Shown in pieces: positions 1-58,358 of a stretch of DNA of 64,000 nucleotides. This DNA comes from Ministeria vibrans ATCC 50519. Lineage: Eukaryota; Protista; Filasterea. Where the stretch lies: assembly GCA_943704425.1 (NCBI GenBank), contig CALSCP010002736.1, positions 11,185 to 75,184 on the forward strand, in the 5' to 3' direction. Position 1 is the first letter of the stretch. Every line of letters begins with the position of its first letter. Made by a program: the position numbers and the translations under genes. The notes beneath the pieces were generated by a model. It ran no database searches and was not told where the DNA came from. It saw nothing but the letters and a program-made list of their open reading frames with translations.

Positions 1-1051
1 ATGTCGGAGGAGGTCACGTGGAACAAAGTGGATTCAGAGAAACTTTTGAAAACGGAACTTTTCAGTTCGATGAATTGGTTCGAGAGAATCAGCGCAGTGA
101 TGGAGTTGTTGTGCGACAAAAACGCCACGTTGAGCGTCAGAATCTATAAAGAAGATGTTAAAAAAAAAGGTACGTTCCACTCGATCGATTAATTGATCTG
201 AGTACTACCTGTGAGAACTTTGTGACTGCGTGGAAGAGAACGTACGTGGTGGCCAGGAGGAAGTAGAGGAAGAGGTAGAAGGGGTCACGACGACGACGGG
301 TTTGGACACTGCAGGCGAGCCAGTAGAGGGTGTCCATGATGTCCTGGCCCACCGACGAGAAGAGGCGGTCGACCACCTCAAGCATGTTGTAGATAACGTA
401 GAGCTTGATGGAGGACTGGCCGCGAATGGCGTGGTAAAGGCGTGAGAGGTCGAGACGTGAGAGGACAAGAGTGACAGCGACGATCATGAGCAAGCGCATA
501 ACGTCGCACAGTGCTGCGCCTCTGTCGCGCTTCTCCTGGTCTGTGTTGTTTCGGTTGGCGTTGAAGAGGCGCCGGACGAACGTGAAGAGGTGGCGGGGCA
601 GAGAGAAGAGAATGCGGAGGGGCAGCACAGTGATCATGAAGAGAAAGGAGTCGAGGCAGAGAATGAGGCCGAACCAGAGGAGCTGCTCGAGCACGGGCGG
701 CACCTGGAACACCGTGACAACACGGCGGTGCTTCTCGCTTGAGATGGGGTCGTTTTCGTCGGCGAGTGGAGCGGTGAGAACGAACTCGCGCGAGAGAAAC
801 CCAAAGAGCGACGGTGCGCGCAATTGTGAGGGAAGAGAGGAGGTGCGCCGCGCCGGGGGGGTCGACGGAGGAGTGGCGTCAGCACAGGCGGCGTCCTCCT
901 CGGCGTCCGCATCGCTAGCAGTGTCAAATGAAGAGCGAGCGTCGACCGAACGCGAATGTGAGTTGCCACGCAAGTTGGAGCGCCGGCTGGGACTCGTCGG
1001 AGCGTCGCTGGAGGACTCCTCAGTTGGCAGTGATCTCTTCCCCGAGGACAT
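1..1051 (-). CDS. TAPT1: TAPT1/EMP65 (DUF747) family membrane protein, 5' part; continues beyond the window start
   Basis: ATG at 1051. Motifs LEQLLWFGLILCLDSFLFMITVLPLR and DLSRLYHAIRGQSSIKLYVIYNMLEVVDRLFSSVGQD. After a short GT-AG intron (~144-208) the next exon reads ILTLNVAFLSHNNSITALILSNQFIELKSSVFK. Confidence 0.9.
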
Positions 1052-1166
1052 GCGATGGCTGTGAAGAAGCGTGAAGTCACTCAAGTCAGGTCAGACTGTC
1101 AGAGAAATCTGAAAAAATCTGTCTTTTGACTAAAACATTAAATTTTATATATATTTCATTTCTGTG

Positions 1167-2026
1167 ATGAGCAGCGAGCCAACACCATCGCCGTGGGGTG
1201 CGCGCGTCCCCGATCTGGAGGAGGTGGACCCGTCCGACCGCTGTGGGGTTCTTGAGGCGCGCGAACAGGCGTTCAGAGACCGTGCCGTGTACCAGATGAG
1301 ACTGAGTATGTGCACATGTGCATGTGTGGTGTGTGCGCGAGAGCGTCGTAGTGTGCGGGCGCTTGTGAGGCGAAGAGAGAGTGAGAGAGAGAGAAAATAG
1401 TTTTCTCTCTCTGCTTTGCGCTCCTTCTCGCTCTCTGTTGCACCTCTACATCCAGGTTGGAGGGTGGAGGGGGCACGGGCGCCTGCATTGGGCAGCGACG
1501 CGGGTCGCTTATGTTTCTGGACGAATGAGCAAACGACCTTTTTAGTTCTTTTTTTTTGGTTTTGGTTTTGCCGTTTATGTCTCCTTTGGGGACTCTTTTC
1601 TGCTGCTCTACGGTGCATTCTGCCTCCTATGCAGTGTTTCTGCTGATGGGAGGTGGGCGCAAGTCAGTTTGGTGCGCTGTTGGAGTTTGTTTTTGAGTTT
1701 TTGAGTTTTGATTAATCGTTTGAGTGTTGCAGAATAAGAACCTGATGGCAATAATTTTTATGATTGATAAAATTAATAATAATTTGTAACAATTTATGTC
1801 ATTGGCGCTGATGTTTGTTTTGCTTCCTTCTCTTTTCTTCTTAGTGGTGTTGCGTGACGAGATGCAAACGTGCTACATGCACCATCCAATGGACCACAAG
1901 AAGCACTGCCGAGAGATCGCCGAGGACTACATGGAGTCGTTCCGCAACCCACCGCCTACTTACCACGCCATTGCGAAGCGTAGAGGGCTTCCCAATGGCG
2001 CAGGGCCGGTTAAGGGGGACGAGTGA
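1167..2026 (+). CDS. NDUFB10: NADH:ubiquinone oxidoreductase subunit NDUFB10-like (2 exons: 1167-1305, 1845-2026)
   Basis: A phase-1 GT-AG intron joins ...EVDPSDRCGVLEAREQAFRDRAVYQMRL to MVLRDEMQTCYMHHPMDHKKHCREIAEDYMES. The CY-x10-C pattern resembles plant/fungal NDUFB10. Confidence 0.75.
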
Positions 2027-2223
2027 GAGTGAGTCGTGTGTGTCTAGTGAAGCAAATGTGACAATCTTGATTTTTAACGAGTATCTAGTGTGTAAGGGAG
2101 GGGTTATTAGGTGTAATAAGAAAAATAATGGAAAATAATAAAAATAGGGGTGCAGAAGAGTTGAGACTGAGGGTTTGAGAAAGAGAGCCGAGAGCAATGC
2201 GCAGACTGGAGAGCAGAAAGCAC

Positions 2224-2326
2224 TCAATAACCAGATTTTGATGGAATTCGGTTGCTCTCACGTTCCTTCTTCGCGAGTTTGCGCAGCATTGGAGCTTTGT
2301 TCTTGTGTGTCTATACAAAAAGAGGA

Positions 2327-2417
<91 letters not shown>

Positions 2418-5132
2418 AAGATACAAAGTGATAGAGAGAGAGAGGAGAAAGATACAAAGTGATAGAGAGAGAGAGGAGAAAGATACAAAGCGATAGAGAG
2501 AGAGAGAGGAGAAAGATACAAAGTGATAGAGAGAGAGAGGAGAAAGATACAAAGTGATAGAGAGAGAGAGGAGAAAGATACAAAGTGATAGAGAGAGAGA
2601 GAGAGAGGAGAAAGATACAAAGTGATAGAGAGTGAGGGGAGAAAGATACAAAGTGATAGACAGAGAAGAAAGATACAAAGTGATAGAGAGAGGAGAAAGA
2701 TACAAAGTGATAGAGAGAGAAGAAAGAAACAGAAGAGAAACGAATAGAGAACAAAGTGATAGAGAGGGTTAAAGGATGTCAATTAGAGATAGTGGACCTT
2801 ACGAGTTCAATAACACCCGGTCGTTGCATCCATGGCTCGCCATCCACCTGCATAGGCAGTGTGTCTATACATAATAATAAGAATAACAATAAACAAACAT
2901 AGTATCAGAGAGGCAAGTCATTACAAATAATAGTATCTCATTTACCGACTGTTGTGATTCGGATGACAGAACCTTGACAGATTCGATGAGCCCCAGACGA
3001 GATTCCAGTTGTCAGTCGGCCCTATAATAGAAAAAAAAGATTGAGCACACACACACAAACAAAATCAAACCTAGATTGATTACTAGGAGTGCAAGAGAGG
3101 CCTGCTTGACTCACAATCACCGACTCACTCTCTCTTTCACTTACCACATGCACTGAGCTGTAGAGACCAACAACTTCAAGACGGCCATCGCCCATGTCCT
3201 GCTGGCCAAACTTGGTGTCGTTCTTGGACGGAGTGCCCCATAGGTCAGCACCACCGTACATCGACGTGATGTTCACCACTGCGATCCCTTCTAGTTTATG
3301 CCCCTCACTGCAGCAACAAAAACGTGAGTGAATGAGTGAGTGGTCATATATATACATATATATATGTGTGTGTGTGTGTGTGATGATGATGATGATGATG
3401 ATACGTGATGCGCGCGATAGTGTGAATAGTCATACACAACTGATGACTTGAATACGACTTTATGTGGCGGTTCATACCCCAAATCAAGCTTGACTCCATC
3501 GCATTCAAGTGAGACGGACTGATGGACATTCTTGAACTTGTGCTGCAGTGCGTCCTGTGTACCAAACTGTGCGTACCACAATTTATTGCGTGCTCGTGAG
3601 CTAAACTATAACCATAATGCGAGTGTGAGAGAGCTGTTTTGTGCTCTACTTTGCTACCTTTTGTGGATGTTTCTCTCGCATCAAGTGGAACTTGCGTGCA
3701 ATGTGAGCATCAACACCAATGCTAAAGTAGTTGTTGACAATATCCAAAGGTGCATCGTCGCCCTCAGAGTCCTCGCTGCTAACACTCTCCGTAATGTCTA
3801 ATCGCCACCTGTAAAAAACACAAGATGCACACAGAGAATTGAGTTGGCATTGTCTGATAATACCAAAATAAGTTTCTTATTATTATTCTTCTTCTTACCG
3901 ATCAAGATATTTAATTTCCGTGTCGTACAGCTCAAGAAGACGCTTCATTGGCTCACCCGTGTAACCACCACCCCAATTGAGGGCACGTGCAAGGTCATTC
4001 CCAGTGCCGAGAGGCACAATACCAATCGGTGGCCATGACGACGGGTTGAGCTTGTCGAGCACAGAGAGCACCCAACCCACTGTACCGTCGCCACCGCAGC
4101 ATAACACTTGATACCCAGGGACCTTTTGAAACATCTCAAGACTGCGCATGAAGAAAAAAATAAAAAGTGCAAACCAGACTTTTGTGAGTGACTGAATGTG
4201 TATGTTGTAGAGTGTTTTACCCTCTGGCAGGTCCCCCGTCGTTGAGATCAAACAACTGACGTGGGTTGAGAAGAAACTGTAGTTGACGCATAAGCTATGT
4301 AAAGAGAAGGAGGGAGCGAGGATAAGTGTCCGTTCCCAGAGTAAGCGAGAGGGTTTCTGCGTTGTGTTGTACCTTTGCGCCTTGATTTCCGCCTGATTTG
4401 GGGTTGATGAAGACAACCAAGGGAGTCGTTTCGGGAAGGGGGACAATCTACAAGGAGTAAGTACACGTGAATGAGTGTGGGTGAGGAAGAGAAGGAGAAA
4501 ATATGACGACTGTATACGTACGTTGAGTTTGTTGCTGAGAGAGATTGAGGCAGAGGGGTCAAATGGCGAAGGAGAGCTCGGAATGCTCGCAACAGAGTCA
4601 ACTGAAGAGGCATGAACAAGTTTGGGAGAAGATGAAGCAGTGACAGTGGCAATTGAAGCGAGAGCAGTAGTAGTGGTGGTGGTTGTGGTTGATGATGTTG
4701 AGGGTGTTTCAGGATCTGATGCGTGTGCAAGTGCGAGTGAATGTACGTCCAGTTGCAACTGGCTTCCAAACTACATGCGCGCAACATCACAATATTAGCG
4801 TGTGTGAAAATATCTCTGTGTGTGTGAATTTGATAGAAAGAGAGAGAAAGGAAGAGAAACAAAGTGATAGAGAAACAAAGGGATAGACAAAGTGATGGAG
4901 AGAGAGAGGAAAGATAATGTGTGTGTGGTGTTACATCTGATTTGAGGCGGAATGCAGTGGACGGAAGAATGAGATCTCTGAGAGCACCGAGATTGCATCG
5001 TGGAGGAACAGATCCTTGACACTTTGCATGACACTATAAACAAGCGCGAAAATGTTAAGAGGAGACATCAATTAAAAGAAGGTTAGGAGACGCAACGTAT
5101 TCACTCTAAAACTCAAAGAAGTACACACAAAT

Positions 5133-5190
<58 letters not shown>

Positions 5191-6529
5191 GCCCTATCTA
5201 TTCACACGCACATATCCACATCCGTTTTTTTTTACCGATCTCTTGCACCATGCACATCTCCACCCATCCAACGACTTTGTCTTGCCACAGTCCTTGCGAC
5301 ACACCATACATGGCTCCTGCCCAAAGTTGCCCAATACCCAATGGTGTAAGGGTGTCTCATCACCATTTCCTTTCACATTAAAGCTCTGTGAAAGAAAAGA
5401 ATCAGAAGATTTACACAAAAGCCTTTTAGTGCGTGTGAAAATAAAGTTACCTTGACAAACGTTGGACGACAGGGTGATTCCATCCGATAAGCACATTCCT
5501 CGTGACTGCACACTTTGCACACTAGAGTTGTATCAGCACGCACAAACACCACAATTAACACCATTAGTTTTGCTTTGAATATCATTGTGTGCGTGTGGGT
5601 GTCTCTGTCTATCTAAAGTGGCTACCTTGGCAACGCAGTCCTTGTTTCCCCAGATTATTCAGACGTTTCTCGCACACATTGCAATATGCTCCAAACACAA
5701 ACGTTTTTAAATACCACTTGTGTTTCCCTATTGAACAAAAACAACAAAACGTCACGTCAGTTGCGTTGTTCAATGCGTATTTGTGCGGGAGTGCATAGAG
5801 AGAATACTCTATAATGATTTTTTTTTAGTAAAAGGTACCTTCGCGCACAAAGGACGACGCATCAAGTCCCAGTGCGGCGAGGAGAGGCGCTGCTCGTGTT
5901 CCGCCTTCGACCCATTCCTGCAGTGAGATCCTGCCCGATTCGTGCGAGCTCAAGTCCACTAGCATCTTGCGAAGAAGCTGAATCAAAAAGAGACAAACAG
6001 AGTGTTTGTGATGACTATTATTCCAACGTGGTGTGGTTTCGTACGGGAAGCGCTTCGGTGTGGTTGTGCCCAAGACCCGTCACTGTTTTAATCATTTGCT
6101 TGAGAAGGTTCTCCAGTTCGCCATCTTCCAGAAAGCCAGAGTTGTCTTCGTCGTATACCTTGAACATGACTACGCGAAAAACAAAACAGTCAGTGAGACG
6201 AGAAAGGGAAGCGCGTCGGGAGAGTGTGAGTGCCGGTGCATGTCAATGCGTACATTCCAGCTTCTGTTCGGGCGTGCCAGCCTCGAGAATGGATGCGGAC
6301 AGGAGAAACTCCTTGAACGAGATGGTCTGGCTCTTGTCTGCGTCAAACGTCTCAAAGAGCCGCTGCACAAGGCTCTCGTCCGCCTTGATTTGCAGTCGTT
6401 CGAGCAGAAACATTTTGAACTCGTCGTAGTTGAGTTCGCCCGAAGGATGTTCCGAATTGGCATCGCCAACGCCCGTCCGGCGCACTGCCGCGTACTCCTT
6501 GAACACACGACTGAGCTCCACCTTGGACA
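2224..6529 (-). CDS. DGK: Type I diacylglycerol kinase (recoverin-like/EF-hands, two C1 domains, DAGK catalytic and accessory domains), multi-exon; first exon/start codon not found
   Basis: Spliced exons give [55 protein letters not shown]1 motifs ([20 protein letters not shown]; HHWVLGN..CMVCRK..WRCAWCK), [44 protein letters not shown] and VDGEPWMQ. The 3' end at 2224 is tentative. Confidence 0.93.
2330..2765. repeat. (GA)n microsatellite followed by a ~30-bp tandem minisatellite (GA)nGGAGAAAGATACAAAGTGATA in the last DGK intron
   Basis: About a dozen visible copies of GAAAGATACAAAGTGATAGAG. Confidence 0.95.
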
Positions 6530-6752
6530 CTGTGCATCGTGGGGTAAAATCAAAAAAAGAGGGAGAGACAGAGAGAGAGGTGAGAAAAAAAAACAAAGAA
6601 AACAATAGTTTTGATGACGATTGAAGATTGGTTCGAAAAAAAGAGAAAAAATACAATAGCGCGTCGACGGGCTTCAGAGGGGCAGGCACGAGCAGCAGAA
6701 AGCCATGAGGTTGGCGGGGCACGGTGGAAACGGGCGAAGGGAGGCGTGGGAG

Positions 6753-6797
<45 letters not shown>

Positions 6798-6955
6798 CGC
6801 GAACTCGTCACATCAGTGGGGTGTGAAAACGTCCTTGGAGCGCCCACACACGCATGCGATGTGCTAGGTGGTCGCGCGAAAGCCGCATACGGCGCCACGC
6901 CACCGTCGTATGGCGCGAAACAAGCGGAGATGGACATAACGGGAATCCGTTTTTG

Positions 6956-6999
<44 letters not shown>

Positions 7000-7008
7000 G
7001 TATCTTAC

Positions 7009-10000
7009 CTGGATCGGATCCTAAGAGAGTGTTAACGAGCCCAAACAGCTGCATCACTCGCTCGTCCTGACGCAAATCCTCGTGGCCCTTTAGCAAGAAT
7101 TGATAACGCTTTCCGTCGCTACCCATCACCGTCAGCTTGCGCGGTCGCTGTTTGCTCGTAATGACATTGAGAGAGGCAACAAACGACTGGATCTTCACGA
7201 CTGAGCTGCGCGCCGCCTCGACCGTGTACATACCAGGCATGGCCAGCTCCATGTCACGCGCCTCAAGCAGCTTGGGCGACACATACTGTAGCTCGAGCGA
7301 CGTCAGCTGCGGCAGCTGCTTGCTGATGCGTCGGAACACATGGTAGTACAGGTCCCACGCCTGGTTGAGATCCTTGACTGCTCCCGATCGCTGGTACTTG
7401 CGACACCACTCGAGCGCCTCCTGCAGGTCCCGTCCAAACGCCTGGTTGAAACTCACCTCCCGCAGCGTCTCCGGTCCGCGCTCCAGCATTTTGTGAAGCG
7501 GCGCGAGCTTGGCCAGCATCCCTTCGACGTTGTGCTCGCCAAAGTACAGACGTGACGCCTCCTCAAGTCCCTCGTGCCACATCTCGTGCCACAGAATCGC
7601 CACACGAATCAGCTCCTGACTCACCAGCAACGCCTGCTCCACAAGCAAAGCAGAGTGCTGTCGCATGTTGTCCATGATGCTCGCCGCAGCATCGCGTCGA
7701 TCAGGCATCTCGCTCTTGCTCGCCACCGTCACAGGGTACACCAGCGCCTGAGGGTGCTCACGCCCAATGCTCGTCAACAGCGTGTGCACCAGCCCACCCA
7801 CCTTGGCCGAAGGCGTGTGGATGCGCGCAATGAGCTGCGGAATTACCTGAAGCCATGTGTCGATGCTCAGACTCGCAATGCCCTCCACAATGGTCGCGCA
7901 CACCTCCTCCTGGTGACCATACTTGAACCAGAGCGTCAACAAACGCAACGTGTCCTGCAACGACTTGCCCTCTTCGCTCAACGCCACGCTTCGGAAGAAA
8001 CCCCGCAACGACGGGATCACATAGCGCGACACAAGGTCGTCCGCACGCAACGAGTTGGTCTTCTCGTAGTGCGCCACCGCCTCAAAGTAGGCAAGCGAAA
8101 GCGCGTGCCACGCATGGTACCAGTCCTCGTCGTAGGTGGTCGCCTGAAGGAAGGCCGACAGGATCGCGGGAAAGGCTTCGTCGGCCTGCTCGCTTGCCGC
8201 CGACGCACCGCCACGCTGACCCATCACACCATCGTTGCTCATTTGCAACTGCCACTGGCCCAGCTTAAGATAGCAGCGCGCCAACAGACGGTTGCGCTCC
8301 TCGGGCGACATCACCGCTGTGCCACGCGACGCCAACGACGACCCGGGTACCGATCCAGATGCCGACGACAACATGGCGGGAACGGCCATCGCCGACATGG
8401 ACGCCGACGAGGGAACCGATGCCGTAGCCGACGACGCTGCGAGCATGATGAACGCTGGCGAGGAGGAACGGCCACTCGACATAAGATTGCTCAGGTGCGC
8501 TGCGGGGTTCGCGGGCTGTCCAGGGCCCTCGTGGAGCGTGTCCACAAACTCGCGAAGACGCTGCAGTGCCAGCGGTCCCTCGCCCACATGCCACATGTGC
8601 TGCAGATAGGCAAACGTCACTTGTGGATGAGCGTCCTTGGGCACTCGGCCACCGGGTAGCCGCGCCGGATCCGCACCCAACAGGTCCACGAGTGTCTTCT
8701 GGCTCAATTGCGCACGTCCCGAGCGCCGACACAGCGACGCAAACTCAAGCCAGGCTTCGCGATTCTCCTCAATGGTCACGACGAGCGAACGCATCTCGAG
8801 CACTCGTTGCCACACCTCGACGTTGCGCTGGCACCAGCGCAGACGCTCGTCCCATGTCTTACGCATACTCATACGTCGCGCGTCATCGTCCGGACCCGGC
8901 GACAGCTGCTTGTACTGCGCAATCTCTTCAAGCTCGGCAAGCATTTGCACCTGCACGGTCACACGGTAAGCACGCTGGTACGACTCGCCGGTAAGTGCCG
9001 TCATTTCCGCGTCAAGCAAATCGCGTGCCGTATCAATGTGCTGCTGGGCGGCGACAAAGCTGTTCTCGTGAATCGCAAGGACCGCGCGATAAAACTCAAA
9101 ATCGGGCGAGTCGCCGCGCATCACCGACAGATACGTCTCCATCCATTCCCACTGACTGAGACCCCAGGCGGCCGCGGCAGCCATGGGCGCAATTGCACGC
9201 TTATTCTCCTTGGAGGCGGTACGCCAACGCTCCTGTGCCAGCAGCTGCAACTGTTCCCAGCCACCGAGGGCGTGCAAACATCGCATGCGCCCCAGCATTA
9301 TGTCCATGTCAAGTGGATTCGCCGCTTGCTTCTTCTCGTAGCTGCCCAACGCCTCGTCCCACTGCTGCAATTTCTCATAGATGCTATCCTCGATCTTCAC
9401 CTCCATGTCTCGCTTGTTCTCCGCGTACTTGAGCATGCCCGCAGCCGCCTCGGGCTTCTCCAGCTTGTTGTTAATTGTGATGAGTGCCTCGACCGCCTCG
9501 GCCGTCGCCTTCTGGTGAAACTCCAGCTCCTTGTAGTGCAGCGCCTTGGCGTAGGCTTGGCAGCGCGCCGCGTGCTCGCCGAGCGTCTTCGACTCAATGG
9601 GCAGTGCCTTGTCGTCGTGCTCCATAAACTCCGAGAGATTCAACAGTGTCTGCAAAATCTTTGTGGGAATGGTAGTGGAGCGCAGCGCCGAGTCAATGGT
9701 CGTGGCAAGATCTGCTTGCATGCGCTCAAACAGTTCGCTCCAGCACGACACAAAGGCCGCATTGAAGAGCTCCTGTGCCAACGGTTCGTACACGTGCGCC
9801 AGTGCCGAGCACGATCGCAACGACGGACTCGGCGACTCGCGCAGCAACTCGACGGAAAACTGCCGCATCCACTGCACCCAATCTTCCTTGGTCGACTGCT
9901 CCGTCGATTCCCACGTCTTGCGCAAGTTAGCCTGATTCACCGCAAGCTTCTTCAGCGTGCCCGTTACCACACCACCGTCCGAGCCTGCACCACCACCAAT

Positions 10001-12346
10001 CGCGCCACCACCCACACCACCACCGCCACCCACGCCACCCACGCCGCCACCCACGCCGCCGAGACCCCCGAGTCCGCCACCACCCGTGGTCGCACCACCA
10101 GCCGTGCCGTTGGCCATGGCCTCGCCCAGCATATCGCCGCCACCGCCCAACATGGTCGACTGGTTGCCCGCTCCCAGTGTTGGTCCGGTGACACCGACAA
10201 GTCCCAAACCGCCGCCAACCGGACCGCCCATTTGGCTGCTGCCCATCAGCGAAGCGTTGTCGCTGTTGAGCGCACTCTGCAGGAAGATGTCCGTCTCGGG
10301 GGCGTGTCCAGCCGCAATGCGCGACGCAATCGTGTTGAAGAGCGGATGTTGAATGCGGTTGCGAATAAGCAGGGGACGCACAAGCGGCAGAAATACCGCA
10401 AAGTCGTTGCCCATCTGCATGGCAATGGCCGATAGCGCCGACATGGCGACGGGACGCAATTCGGGCGAACTGTTGAGCACGCGCGCAATAGGATGCACTA
10501 CACGACTAGCATAGTCGGTGAGGTCGAGGCGACGGCACATGCGAGCAACGGTGCGCAACGCAGCGTCCTTCACCGACAGTTCGGCGTCGGTCGCCTCGAA
10601 CAGCTTCACGATGGCCGGCAACACCAGGTGAAGGTAGTCGTCGAGGTTGGCACCAAACTTTTCGAGTGCATCCAGCATTTTGATGGTCGCCTGCTGGTCG
10701 TCGCGCTGAACGCGACGTGCAAGCACACGCAGAATGCAGGGTAGCAGTTGTGGCAGGTAGACCTTGAATTCGGAGCCGATGGCAAGCGAGATGCTCTCGA
10801 CAAGTGCAATAATGGTCATCTGAATGACATTCCAGTAGGTGTTGATCAAATCGAAGATGTCCTCGAGATAGGGACGCACATGTTGACGCACAATGGAGAC
10901 AAGTGTACCGAGTTCGCGAAAGAGAAACTCGCGAAAAGACGGCTCGTGACGGTGTCGCATGACTTGCAAAAGCGGTGCCATAATCTTGGGAAGGTAGGGC
11001 ACGCACTTGAGGCCGAGCGACTTGACAATAAACATAAGTGCCTGCACGGCAAGCGTGTGGTGAGCACTCAGGGTGGGGTCGCGCATGATGCGCACGAGAG
11101 CCTCCACCGATACGGTCGGGTAGTAGTCCTCGGACGACGGACTGAGCGTCGTCGATGACGAAGCCGAGTCGTTGGCGTTGGCCTCGTCGAGGGTCGCGTC
11201 CACGTCGCGCACCTTCTGCTGATTGACCTTGTAGTGATAAGGATCGAGAGCACCAAAGATACCAATAAGCTTGAGAACCTCACGACGAATGGAAGGAGTC
11301 GGCTCCGTCTTCAAGAAGTTCAAGAGAATCGGCAAGAGAGACGCGTGGTCGAGGTAAGGGCGCATGACATAGCCAGTCGACACGGCCAGCTGGCCCATGG
11401 TGCGCAGGGCAACTTCACGCTTGGCAACCGACCCCTGATCGCGGAGCTGATCGATGAGGATGGGAAAGAGCTCATCGAGTTCCTTGGACAGCTCGTCGCT
11501 GCCAACCTTGGCGAGCTCGCCGAGAGCCGAGAGCACCGAACAGGCGACAGCGGGATTGCGGTCGCGCATTTTGGAAACGAGCACGCGTAGCACAGGCTCG
11601 ACGTAGGGTTTAACAAGACGCGGTGCGTTTGCAATGAGACGGCAAAGCAGGCGGGCGCTCTCTTCCTTGTTCATGCTGACGCCCGAGAACTCGAGTTCCG
11701 TCAGGAGTTGCACAAGTGTCTTGCGCAATGGAGGCATTACATGGGCCGGATTGAGTGTGGTGAGACGACCAATAACGCTGACGGCAAGTTCGCGAATCTC
11801 AAAGACCTCGTCATTGAGTGCAGTAAAGAGCGAGCGAAGGTTCTCCGCTTGCGCAAGATACACGTCAAAGCAAGGATCGAGGGAGTTGAGCACAGAAAGA
11901 CGAATGGACGGCTCTGGATCGGCAATGCCCACAATGAGTAGACGCTCAAGGACCTCACCGACCACGGCGGAACTGGCGCTCTGTTTGGCACGCGCCGTCA
12001 TGTTGTCCAACGCCGATGTCTCCGCTTGCAGCATATGGTTGATGCCCGGCGGTGAGTTTGGAACGTAAAAACTCGTGTTGTTGCTTGTGGTCGGAGTCGG
12101 ATGAGGCTCGGATGGCAACGGGTTGGTCGAAGCCGACGATGGTGATGCCAGTGAGAGGGTTGAGTCGTCAGTGCCGGAAGGAATACCGACCGAAGCGGAG
12201 GTGGGGAGCGCTGCAAAAGAAGTCGATGGAGCAGCAGCACCACCACCACCACCACCAGCACCACCAGCAGCAGCAGCACCAGCGGAGGCACCAGCGGAGG
12301 CAGAGATGCTCGATGAAGACGACCCTGTAGCATTCGTAGCAGCAAC

Positions 12347-12383
<37 letters not shown>

Positions 12384-14474
12384 CTACCTCCAACAGCACC
12401 ACCACCACTTGAAAAGGTTGTGACGGGAGGTGGGACAGGTGCGCCTGAGGAGGCGGTAGAGAGCGATGATGCGGCAGGATGAATCTTCTTTTTGCTGCTC
12501 TTGTCGGTCTTGGCGGAGACAGGACGTTCGGCATTGGCAAGAATGCGCAAACACGTAATGGCGGCCTCCTTGCGAATGCCAGCCGAGTCATCCTCGAGAC
12601 ACACGACGACCCATTCACGCAGGAAGACGGTGAGATCATGACTGCTGAGGTCAAATCTACCGAGGGTGCGCAGTGCAAGCATGATGGTCTCGTTGTCAAA
12701 CGTCTCGGAGGTAGTGCCACCAGCACCACTGCTGGAAGAAAGCAAGAGATTGGCAGTGCGCGAGTCTGAGCCTCGCAGACCAATGGCGGAGGCGGGGCCT
12801 GAGCGGACGGCACGGGCACTTGCGTTCACAACGGCACTGACAACATTCGTGGCGGACGAGACGGGCATGCGACCAGACGTGGCGGGCCGACCGCCACTGC
12901 CGGTGCCGTTGGGCGGGATGGAGAGTCCCGGAAAGCGGTAGGGAAGACGCGAGAGAACCTTGGAGAGGATCTCGAGCAGACGTGCCTGAATGTTAGGCAC
13001 CATGGCCTCGATGTTGTGTGCGAGGTCGCGCAGGGCCACAACGAGTGGCTCGCTGAGACCACTGGCAAACATGAGGTCGAGCAGGTCGTACATGCTGGTG
13101 GAGAGGCAAGGGACGGAGGGGACGGCACGCGCGAGCATGGAGACGCAGGCGAAGACGGGACCCTCGTTGGCAAGCTTGCTGCTGCCACGTTTCGGCGTGA
13201 GGCCGTCGCGCACGTTATTGAGGATGCGTTCGTAGTAGGGAGGAGTGATGTCGGCGCCCAAGGCGAGAGCCATTTCGCCAAGAGCGTGGAAGGCGGAGGC
13301 GCGATGGGGTTCGCGGCGCACCACGTTGAGCAAGTGTTCCATGCACGAGTCGAGGTGGCCCGAAGCGACAAAGCCCTCGGGACTAAAGCTCGCCAGGGAT
13401 GGAAGCAATGAGATGACGGTGCGTTGCACAAGCGAGCTACGATGGTCCTTGTACTTCATGATGGTCTCGCAAGTGAACGCAAACTGCTCCATCATAAACT
13501 CGTCCTGGTGCAGCAACAGTTCGCCCAGGGCCAGCAGCGAGCCGTGCACTGGATCGTCCTTGTTCGACTTGAGGCCTGTCAGAGCCTCCTCGTAGACGAT
13601 TTTGGTCCATTGTGCGCGGATGCGCGGCTCGCGCTTTGCCGTGAGGGCCAGAGCAGCGCGCAACGCTGCAATGGCCCCCTCGCGCACCGTGTTCTTTTGG
13701 TCGCGCACGGCGACAAAGATACTCTTGAAGAACTGGCCGATGATGGTGTAGAAGAGGGTGGGGGCATTGGTCGCGAGCTGGTCGAGGACGAGCACCGCAG
13801 CGTACCGCTTCATCTCGTTACGATCGCCCTGCAGCCACTCGAGCGCCTCACGCGCCTCAAACTCGATAAACTCGGCCGTGAGCGTGCCGCCTACAAGGGC
13901 AAGGCGACCGACCGCCTTGGAGGCGACGACCATGACCTGTGCGTCGTTGCCAGGCAGCACATAGCGCAACTGGTTGGTAAAGCGAGCGATTTTTGTGGCG
14001 TTCTCTTCGCCCTCAAAGTCTATGAGCTCGTTGATGGCAAGCAGGCCGCCAATGCGCTCCGCAGTGTCTGTGCAGTGCACCATGTCGCTGATGCCGCGGT
14101 CAACGGCCTTCATAAAGGTCACAGCGTCGCCTGGATTTTCTCGGACGTGCGACGCAACATAGGCGCGCAGTTCCTGGGCTGCACGGACGCGCGCGTCCTC
14201 GTTGCTGTCGACAGAGAGGGCGGGGGTGAGCAGGGGGGTGTGGGGCGCGCGGCAGACGGGGGAGAGAGGGCCCAGGGGGGCCGGGGGAGAGGCGGGAAGC
14301 GATGCGGCTGCTCACAGCATCGAAAATACCCAAGAGAAAAAAAAGAAAAAAAAGGGAAAAAAAGAAGAAAAAAAGGGAGAGCGGAAGGGAAAGGGGGAGA
14401 AGTGGAACACACAGGTGTGAAGAGAAGACATACCGGCTCTTGAGCTCGCCGAGTAGGCGAGCAAGTTCTGCCAT
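7009..14474 (-). CDS. TOR: Target of rapamycin kinase (HEAT, FAT, FRB, kinase N-lobe); kinase C-lobe and FATC absent from the window
   Basis: Exon 1 (14434-14474, MAELARLLGELKSR) splices to exon 2 (14204-7009). Motifs ELLRESPSPSLRSC, AYAKALHYKE, FRB ([40 protein letters not shown]) and [34 protein letters not shown], then donor AG|GTAAGA at 7008. Confidence 0.97.
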
Positions 14475-57339: not shown

Positions 57340-58358
57340 ATGGCCTGCGGTGCTGTTGGAACTTCTCAAGCTGCGACTGCTGAGGTGCAGGCGCTTTGCG
57401 ACAAGGTGACAACAAACGATTTGCTCCTGCTGCCCATCGCCGCTTCCTGCGCCTTGTTTCGCGCCGCCAACCCTGTCCACCCGCTCCACCTTGCCATGGA
57501 CCACCTTGCTGGCCTGCTACGGAGCGTTGTGTTCATTGCTAGAGAGTTTTTTGTGGGGATTTTCCCCTTTCTTGGCAATATCACTCCTCACGGCCGCTGC
57601 TTTTGACCGTTGCGTCGACCGATTGGGCGTAGGCACTTGGCATGCCCCTCCTATGGGTGCTGGCGTGGCAGGAGTTGAAGCACATCCGACTTTTTGTTTT
57701 TTTTTTTTTTTTTTTTTTTTTTTTTCTGCTTCTTCGCGAAACTTCTCTCTCGCGGCTGTCTCTCTGTTTCTGACGTGTGTGTCCACTTGCTAACGCATCG
57801 CCAGTGAGCACGCGTCCTGTGGATTCTGTTGCGTTTTTTTCCTTTGATTTTTTGAAATGATAATAACGTTTGAATGATAGTTCATTGTTATGACTACTCT
57901 CTGACACATAATGTAATTTGATAGGTCAAGGCCGAAATCGAGGGAAAGGCTGGCGCCACCTACTCGACGTTCACTGCCACGTCTTATGCTACACAGGTAT
58001 TATAAGAGACTATTCGATGTGGATCAATTGAAACATGATTTTGTTGTTGTTGTTTGTTACAGGTTGTGTCAGGCACAAACTACTTTGTCAAGGTATAGTA
58101 CTGCTAGCTAGCTATGGCTATGTTGTTGCTGATGATTTCCTTGTTGTGGTGTTTTGTCTCGTTGTGTAGATTGACGTTGGTGGTGCGTTCATCCATGCGC
58201 GCATCTACCAGGGACTGCCCCACACTGGCCCGTACGATAACCAAGCCACACACACGACAATGATATTAATTGTTAATCGTTTTGTTTATAGGACTGTCTC
58301 TGTCGCGGCTGTGCAGACTGGCAAGACCGCCGACGATGCTATCACCCACTTCGAGTAG
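57340..58358 (+). CDS. Cystatin A/B (stefin) cysteine protease inhibitor (exons 57340-57405, 57925-57996, 58063-58092, 58170-58231, 58292-58358)
   Basis: Spliced product MACGAVGTSQAATAEVQALCDKVKAEIEGK..SYATQVVSGTNYFVKIDVG..IHARIYQGLPH..AVQTGKTADDAITHFE*, with the QVVxG motif. Confidence 0.93.

What the first reader, a model, noticed from the sequence alone, without database searches (positions are those of the whole stretch)
2224..14474. TOR cut inside its kinase domain and spliceable in frame to a headless type I diacylglycerol kinase (TOR-DGK chimera or split genes)
Seen in sequence: TOR similarity runs to ...[16 protein letters not shown] and ends at a strong phase-1 donor (CCAG|GTAAGA, 7009/7008). 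No exon for the remaining kinase C-lobe (catalytic DRH and DFG motifs) or FATC is recognisable in the window. The next acceptor (long polypyrimidine tract, CACAG|, 6530/6529) is also phase 1 and opens the recoverin/EF-hand exon of a DGK with no start exon, and no promoter-like TCAGT/TCACT cluster lies in between. Removing the 479-nt intron gives ...[19 protein letters not shown]... in frame. Established knowledge: phosphatidic acid, the DGK product, binds the TOR FRB domain and stimulates TORC1; type I DGKs are Ca2+-regulated. Inference, three options: (a) a real protein in which the TOR HEAT/FAT/FRB scaffold carries a Ca2+/DAG-sensing lipid kinase instead of its own catalytic lobe; (b) both genes are split and completed by trans-splicing with pieces elsewhere; (c) a chimeric mis-join at the ~39-nt poly-A (6956-6994) or the (GA)n tract (6757-6794). 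Option (c) is a serious possibility.
Basis: partly seen in the sequence, partly recalled or inferred. Interest (0 to 1): 0.9.

Follow-up and report, generated by a model that had tools for sequence, protein, structure and literature searches.

The report
TOR–DGK junction is an assembly mis-join
The apparent fusion of a truncated TOR kinase to a headless diacylglycerol kinase is almost certainly an assembly error at a 39-base poly-A/T run; both genes are ordinary, and their missing ends lie on two other contigs and are joined to them in the mRNA.

Summary
TOR (minus strand, 14474 to 7009) stops at ...LLGSDP with a phase-1 GTAAGA donor, followed by 14 nt and T39. A DGK exon opens at a phase-1 acceptor at 6529.

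The fusion reading fails. Spliced RNA contigs from three studies show no 7009>6529 joint.
- The DGK mRNA continues upstream of 6529 into an exon on contig C964 (MGGHQSRLSEDDLEELQSRTQ, phase-1 donor, then T33). C964 itself ends in a second T33.
- The TOR mRNA continues past 7009 for 863 nt that are not in the window.

The only TOR-type kinase C-lobe plus FATC in the 29.7-Mb assembly lies on contig C733, 66 nt after a T30, behind a phase-1 acceptor.
- Capsaspora TOR aligns to the window up to residue 2126 and to C733 from residue 2127.
- The 863 nt match the distance on C733 from that acceptor to a GGA/GGT repeat.
- The intron halves share only a same-strand T run and no complementarity, which is what confuses an assembler, not what pairs two RNAs.

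It is not a real feature, and interest is low. I found no DNA read that spans the T run, so trans-splicing keeps a few percent.

The parts
14434..14474 (-). TOR exon 1 (MAELARLLGELKS + 2 nt), donor GTATGT at 14433
   Evidence: Sequence read. It matches the conserved TOR N-terminus once joined to exon 2 (…KSR-NEDARVRAAQELRAYV).
7009..14204 (-). TOR exon 2, 7196 nt: HEAT repeats, FAT, FRB and the first ~33 positions of the PI3/PI4-kinase domain. It ends ...LLGSDP + G (phase 1).
   Evidence: Translation. TOR homologues at 55-68% identity. Capsaspora TOR residues up to 2126 align here. FRB at window 7319-7615 is the only one in the genome. RNA contigs cover 7009-9500 and stop matching exactly at 7009.
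6995..7008 (-). First 14 nt of the true TOR intron (GTAAGATACGAGAG)
   Evidence: Contig 8 of DNA run X1 covers from 7006 up to 9500 and carries 35 more letters on its lower-coordinate side.
6956..6994 (.). A39/T39 homopolymer: the point of the chimeric join between the TOR locus and the DGK locus
   Evidence: T30-T33 runs sit at the matching places on C733 and C964. No contig of the independent DNA run X1 bridges 6944-7005.
6530..6955 (-). 3' part of DGK intron 1, containing (CT)19 at 6757-6794 and a polypyrimidine tract before CACAG|. It is not a TOR intron.
   Evidence: DNA contigs of X1 cover 5198-6748 and 6805-6943 continuously with DGK exon 2. RNA depth is zero over 6576-6943.
6254..6529 (-). 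DGK exon 2 (…[12 protein letters not shown]…; first EF-hand). The acceptor at 6529 is used, but with an exon from contig C964.
   Evidence: RNA contigs X6 rec17 and X16 rec13 end their match at 6529 and run on for 68 and 39 nt, a 30-nt part of which is found at C964:3440-3469. Pfam EF-hand_1/EF-hand_7 hits.
4000..6169 (-). DGK exons 3-12: 6045-6169, 5838-5977, 5626-5726, 5451-5521, 5236-5385, 4935-5033, 4522-4770, 4373-4447, 4221-4294, …-4141. They encode an EF-hand, two C1 domains and the start of DAGK_cat.
   Evidence: Ten GT..AG joints seen in RNA contigs of X6, X16 and X11. Pfam run exon by exon.
2782..3999 (-). DGK 3' exons (rest of DAGK_cat, DAGK_acc, C-terminus …[22 protein letters not shown]…). 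Exon borders here are inferred, not confirmed by reads.
   Evidence: Open-frame segments. DAGK_cat and DAGK_acc hits. Not covered by the read stretch.

Best explanation
Contig C2736 is chimeric at the A39/T39 run (window 6956-6994). To its right lies the 5' 2412 codons of a normal single-copy TOR gene. To its left lies a normal type I-like diacylglycerol kinase gene, from the 3' part of its first intron onward.

The true TOR intron is about 110-120 nt: GTAAGATACGAGAG, then a T run, then 66 nt ending TTGTGTAG. It continues into five exons on contig C733 (C733:121597 down to 120056). These encode the catalytic loop (GDRHPSN), HIDFGD and FATC, giving a TOR of about 2802 aa.

The true DGK exon 1 is on the 3.7-kb contig C964 (3406-3469). 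It reads MGGHQSRLSEDDLEELQSRTQ, a recoverin-like head that may be myristoylated. It is followed by GTACGCGTGG and T33, and the contig ends in a second T33.

The assembler could not resolve 30-40-nt homopolymers in introns. It either broke there (C964) or crossed over between loci (C2736, C733).

- Shown: the mRNA junctions, the locations of the missing exons, and single-copy status.
- Inferred: physical contiguity of the DNA.
For: 1. No joint 7009>6529 appears in three RNA data sets from three studies. All ten other DGK introns in the stretch are seen as joints.
2. The DGK mRNA contigs carry 68 and 39 further letters beyond 6529. The 30-mer reported for them occurs once in the genome, at C964:3440-3469. 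It lies directly before GTACGC and gives an ATG-initiated, phase-1 exon.
3. TOR mRNA contigs stop matching exactly at 7009 and carry 863, 863 and 49 further letters.
4. The only TOR-like kinase C-lobe with FATC lies on C733 behind a phase-1 acceptor. C894 is ATM/ATR-like.
5. Capsaspora TOR aligns to the window through residue 2126 and to C733 from residue 2127, with no gap or overlap.
6. C733 exons of 293 + 149 + 232 nt plus 189 nt make 863 nt. That endpoint falls inside a (GGA)4(GGT)7 repeat, where a k-mer contig would break.
7. FRB is single-copy.
8. All three break points sit at same-strand T runs of 30-39 nt. C964 ends in one and starts in (TC)n.
9. The predicted TOR intron of 110-119 nt fits the 65-202 nt of the confirmed introns.
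10. Other first-stage notes on this genome report many genes split at A/T homopolymers. These are leads only.
Against: - No DNA read or contig that I could examine crosses the T run in either arrangement. Logan contigs (k=31) of the independent DNA run X1 stop at both sides of it. Physical linkage of TOR 5' to C733 and of C964 to the DGK is therefore inferred from the mRNAs, not seen.
- I could not read the letters of the 863-nt extension. Only its length agrees with C733.
- The last base of C964 after its T33 is A, while the window has C after its T39.
- C964 has two T runs, so the exact path of DGK intron 1 is unresolved.
- The partner of the other side of C733 (an orphan signal-peptide/EGF-like exon) was not found.
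Confidence: 0.9

Rival explanations
1. The assembly is correct. TOR and DGK are each split between distant loci, and their mRNAs are completed by trans-splicing of separately transcribed halves.
For: Mature mRNAs join exons that lie on different contigs. No DNA contig was seen to bridge the T run in the alternative arrangement. Other readers note many genes broken at homopolymers in this genome.
Against: - The intron halves show no complementarity above chance: the longest runs are 10 and 8 nt, against shuffle maxima of 11 and 10.
- What they share is a direct T run, which cannot pair with itself.
- One break coincides with a contig end, and that contig also starts in a simple repeat.
- Joining the halves gives a TOR intron of ordinary size.
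- Breaks placed exactly at sequences that assemblers cannot resolve are what an artefact predicts.
Confidence: 0.04
2. The TOR 5'/DGK adjacency is real in some copies: a rearranged or duplicated segment coexists with intact TOR and DGK loci that the assembly collapsed.
For: An assembler can output a true minority junction. Depths in the DNA run differ somewhat between the two sides (292 against 364).
Against: FRB, the TOR C-lobe and all poly-T flanks are single-copy in the assembly. There is no twofold depth step. No transcript uses the junction.
Confidence: 0.05
3. A real fusion protein: the TOR HEAT/FAT/FRB scaffold spliced at 7009>6529 to a Ca2+/DAG-regulated lipid kinase.
For: Both splice sites are phase 1, so the join would be in frame. 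From established knowledge, phosphatidic acid binds the FRB domain, so the pairing looks functionally attractive.
Against: - No such joint appears in three RNA data sets, while each site is joined to a different exon.
- The DGK has its own ATG exon, and presumably its own promoter, on C964 head-to-head with another gene.
- The contig depths of the two mRNAs differ 3- to 22-fold. This is a weak measure.
- Contigs can miss rare isoforms.
Confidence: 0.01

Closest known systems
Chimeric contig (assembly mis-join) at a long homopolymer or simple repeat
   Same: Break points lie exactly at 30-39-nt T runs shared in the same orientation by several loci. A neighbouring small contig ends in such a run. 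Genes on either side are cleanly truncated at intron positions and are completed by other contigs.
   Different: Nothing unusual. The only notable point is that long T runs sit in introns, close to the donor (10-14 nt) in TOR and the DGK, so the mis-join mimics an in-frame exon junction.
TOR/mTOR (PIKK family)
   Same: HEAT, FAT, FRB, PI3/PI4-kinase domain with DRH and DFG, and FATC. 55-68% identity to fungal, Capsaspora and animal TOR over the FAT-FRB region.
   Different: Large low-complexity Ala/Gly/Ser insertions. In this assembly the gene is spread over two contigs.
Type I (EF-hand) diacylglycerol kinases, e.g. animal DGK alpha/beta/gamma
   Same: Recoverin-like N-terminus, EF-hands, two C1 domains, DAGK_cat and DAGK_acc, in that order.
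   Different: The N-terminus starts MGGHQS, a possible N-myristoylation signal like those of recoverin/NCS proteins. This is inferred from the motif only. The organism is a marine microbial eukaryote whose TOR is closest to opisthokont sequences.
Trans-spliced split genes of Giardia (Hsp90, dynein heavy chains)
   Same: mRNA exons lie at separate places in the assembly.
   Different: Those introns pair through long complementary stretches. Here there is none, and the breaks coincide with homopolymers and contig ends.

Membership tests
TOR-DGK gene fusion | A transcript that joins the TOR donor (7009) to the DGK acceptor (6529) | tested here: not met
   No such joint in RNA contigs of X6, X16 or X11. 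Both sites are joined to other exons.
TOR-DGK gene fusion | The DGK lacks its own start exon | tested here: not met
   The ATG exon MGGHQSRLSEDDLEELQSRTQ at C964:3406-3469 is present in the mRNA contigs.
TOR (PIKK) | FRB domain | tested here: met
   PF08771, 154.7 bits, at C2736:18503-18799. It is the only copy in the genome.
TOR (PIKK) | Complete PI3/PI4-kinase domain with catalytic DRH and DFG | tested here: met
   Profile positions 2-33 lie in the window and 38-240 on C733 (196.6 bits). GDRHPSN and HIDFGD were read. The two pieces abut at Capsaspora residues 2126/2127.
TOR (PIKK) | C-terminal FATC | tested here: met
   PF02260, 63.6 bits, at C733:120059-120151.
Type I diacylglycerol kinase | EF-hand pair and recoverin-like N-terminal domain | tested here: met
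   EF-hand_1 at 30.4 bits and EF-hand_7 at 30.5 bits are over their cut-offs. DAG_kinase_N scores 22.0 against a cut-off of 23, so that part is borderline (exon by exon).
Type I diacylglycerol kinase | Two C1 domains, DAGK_cat and DAGK_acc | tested here: met
   C1_1 at 28.7 and 24.2 bits (the second is just under the cut-off on a single exon). DAGK_cat at 65.7 bits. DAGK_acc at 43 and 53 bits.
Trans-spliced split gene (Giardia type) | Extended base-pairing between the two intron halves | tested here: not met
   The longest complementary runs are 10 and 8 nt, against shuffle means of 8.5 and 7.4. The shared element is a direct T run.
Trans-spliced split gene (Giardia type) | The halves are physically unlinked in the DNA | not testable with these tools
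   Only k=31 contigs were available, and none crosses the T run.
Assembly mis-join | Independent DNA molecules show the alternative path | not testable with these tools
   It needs long reads or PCR. The inference rests on the mRNA junctions and on the position of the breaks.

The most novel reading that the evidence does not exclude
The assembly is right, and this genome really keeps many genes, TOR and the DGK among them, in pieces that break at long intronic T runs. The pieces are joined at the RNA level by a trans-splicing mode that needs no intron complementarity.
Probability: 0.03. Interest if true: 0.9.

Novelty: not a real feature. Interest (0 to 1): 0.08.

Why it matters
As biology it does not matter. 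TOR and the DGK are separate, conventional genes.

It matters for use of this assembly. Contigs C2736 and C733 are chimeric at intronic T runs of 30-39 nt. Gene models that cross such runs will produce false fusions and false truncations. Other windows of this genome were flagged for the same pattern.

Any annotation of this genome should break contigs at long A/T homopolymers, or be rebuilt with long reads, before anyone infers domain fusions, gene loss or split genes.

Tried and rejected
- **Own-species protein search.** I looked for a full-length or junction-spanning TOR protein from this organism in the 5.8-billion-protein collection. The best identity was 63-76%, so nothing from this organism is served there. 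The letters of the 863-nt mRNA extension therefore could not be read.
- **Metagenome scan.** I searched for the TOR exon/intron boundary and got no hit.
- **Candidate DGK first exons inside the window.** Both are rejected, because the mRNA uses the C964 exon.
  - MAFCCSCLPL at 6706-6677 has an in-frame TGA and no phase-1 donor.
  - MSISACFAPYD, starting about 6936, has only a weak GTGGCG donor.
- **RNA duplex energies.** ViennaRNA runs on the intron halves timed out. I replaced them with a longest-complementary-run test against shuffles.
- **GC content across the junction.** It is 0.61 against 0.49 in the window and 0.51 against 0.55 on C733. This mostly reflects exon density and I did not use it as evidence.
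- **Joined models.** Pieces were searched one by one, by reference.
Full report
**1. The observation**

The window is G000:C2736:11185-75184.

On the minus strand, TOR starts at ATG 14474. Exon 1 is 14474-14434. A 229-nt intron follows. Exon 2 runs uninterrupted from 14204 to 7009. It ends ...[16 protein letters not shown] plus one base (phase 1), then GTAAGATACGAGAG and T39, which is A39 at 6956-6994 on the plus strand.

Downstream lie a GC-rich stretch, (CT)19 at 6794-6757, a long pyrimidine tract, and CACAG| at 6530/6529. That acceptor opens an EF-hand exon in phase 1.

Pfam run exon by exon finds EF-hands, a borderline DAG_kinase_N, two C1 domains, DAGK_cat and DAGK_acc.

No kinase C-lobe or FATC lies anywhere on the contig.

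**2. Where the missing TOR end is**

A whole-assembly search gave 17 PI3/PI4-kinase matches and 5 FATC matches. Only two places have a kinase domain that lacks its beginning and is followed by FATC.
- C894 reads [40 protein letters not shown], which is ATM/ATR-like.
- C733:120059-121597 (minus) is TOR: [52 protein letters not shown]…[24 protein letters not shown]…FATC.

Its first exon follows TTGTGTAG| in phase 1. The G left over at window 7009 plus AG gives Glu, so the protein reads [20 protein letters not shown].

Capsaspora TOR (P0002, 2461 aa) aligns to the window through residue 2126 (ending at window 7010) and to C733 from residue 2127. The two pieces abut with no gap and no overlap.

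FRB occurs once in the genome, in the window. TOR is therefore single-copy and lies on two contigs.

Sixty-six nucleotides upstream of the C733 acceptor is a T30 run.

**3. What the RNA says**

I found runs. I laid four of them on window:4000-9500.

X6, X16 and X11 come from three studies. Their contigs skip ten GT..AG introns of the DGK, so they are RNA-derived whatever their labels say. X1 is unspliced DNA.

No run shows a joint 7009>6529.

The DGK mRNA contigs (2511 and 2472 nt) match up to 6529. They then run on for 68 and 39 letters whose plus-strand consensus is GTTGGGTCCTGCTCTGGAGCTCCTCTAGAT.

The TOR mRNA contigs (6224, 1336 and 612 nt) stop matching exactly at 7009. They carry 863, 863 and 49 more letters.

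Both splice sites are therefore real, but each is used with a different partner.

**4. Where the DGK head is**

The 30-mer occurs once in the assembly, at C964:3440-3469.

There the sense strand reads ATG GGC GGA CAC CAA AGT … ACC CAA C|GTACGCGTGG, followed by T33. This gives MGGHQSRLSEDDLEELQSRTQ with a phase-1 donor. Joined to 6529, the protein reads …[17 protein letters not shown].

C964 is only 3675 nt long. It begins in (TC)n and ends in a second T33. The exon lies head-to-head with a zinc-finger (FYVE-like) gene. The DGK is not headless.

**5. A check on the 863 letters**

The tool did not show the letters, but their number can be tested.

On C733 the first three TOR 3' exons are 293, 149 and 232 nt. 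A further 189 nt into the fourth exon ends inside GGAGGAGGAGGAGGTGGTGGTGGTGGTGGTGG. A k-mer contig would break there, and two independent runs broke at the same length.

This agrees with the C733 exons being the continuation, but it is indirect.

**6. Mis-join or trans-splicing**

All three break points are same-strand T runs of 30-39 nt: the window, C733, and C964 (which has two, one at its end).

The halves of each putative intron share a direct run of 31-34 nt and nothing else. The longest complementary runs are 10 and 8 nt, against shuffle means of 8.5 and 7.4 and maxima of 11 and 10. A direct repeat misleads an assembler but cannot pair two RNAs.

Joining the TOR halves gives an intron of 14 + T(30-39) + 66 = 110-119 nt. 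This is inside the 65-202-nt range of the introns confirmed here.

The flanks of the T runs are unique in the assembly.

Not every T run is mis-joined. A T29 at 57697-57725 sits in the intron of a stefin-like gene whose two exons fit each other.

Other first-stage notes on this genome list many genes broken at A/T homopolymers. I treat these as leads only.

**7. What is not shown**

No DNA contig crosses the T run. Contigs of X1 end at 6943 (+7 letters) and start at 7006 (-35 letters), as expected for k=31.

The physical arrangement is therefore inferred.

Searches for the organism's own TOR protein and for metagenome contigs found nothing.

**8. Verdict**

| Reading | Probability |
|---|---|
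| A real minority or rearranged junction | about 0.05 |
| Real split genes with trans-splicing | about 0.04 |
| Fusion protein | about 0.01 |

- TOR is a conventional gene of about 2802 aa.
- The DGK is a conventional type I-like enzyme with its own first exon.
All pieces were searched apart, by reference.

Noticed in passing
L020 (C733:120000-129871) 2100-1981, minus strand: An orphan first exon encodes a signal peptide plus the start of an EGF-like domain (MVSRSGLLVLVLLGVLAGVGQAQECDSTPCQNQGTCSDTT|GTACGG). It lies about 290 nt upstream of the T30 that precedes the TOR 3' exons. Its downstream exons are not on C733. It is probably another gene cut by the same mis-join.
   Followed up: partly
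L022 (C964) 3406-3469: The DGK N-terminus is MGGHQSRLSEDDLEELQ…. That is an MGxxxS motif like the N-myristoylation signal of recoverin/NCS proteins, followed by an NCS-like LEELQ helix. If it is myristoylated, this type I-like DGK would have a Ca2+-myristoyl-switch-type head. This is inferred from the motif only.
   Followed up: no
window 57340-58000, plus strand: A stefin/cystatin-A-like gene (MACGAVGTSQAATAEVQALCDK | … | VKAEIEGKAGATYSTFTATSYATQV) has a T29 run (57697-57725) inside its intron. Here the two exons fit, so long intronic T runs are a genuine feature of this genome and are not always mis-assembled.
   Followed up: partly
window 2336-2720 and 4853-4891; also L020 5713-6312 and L022 739-1008: A dispersed AG-rich repeat of about 31 nt (AGAGAGAGAGAGGAGAAAGATACAAAGTGAT) forms arrays downstream of the DGK and inside one of its introns. 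It recurs on other contigs. DNA-run depth there is more than 100 times that of its surroundings, and many contigs end in it.
   Followed up: partly
window 5385-5452: RNA contigs differ by one base at one DGK acceptor. X6 uses 5385>5452 with an extra T, and X16 and X11 use 5385>5451. This may be an alignment ambiguity or a strain difference.
   Followed up: no
L022 (C964) 929-3164, minus strand: A two-exon gene with a FYVE-like Cys-rich finger (…CQVCGVATSQQEHCHLCGRTTCSTCG…) lies head-to-head with DGK exon 1, about 240 nt away. This fits the compact divergent gene pairs noted elsewhere in this genome.
   Followed up: no
L020 (C733) 771-605, minus strand: One TOR 3' intron is almost entirely (GT)n/(GTGC)n microsatellite. 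It is another place where this assembly could break.
   Followed up: no
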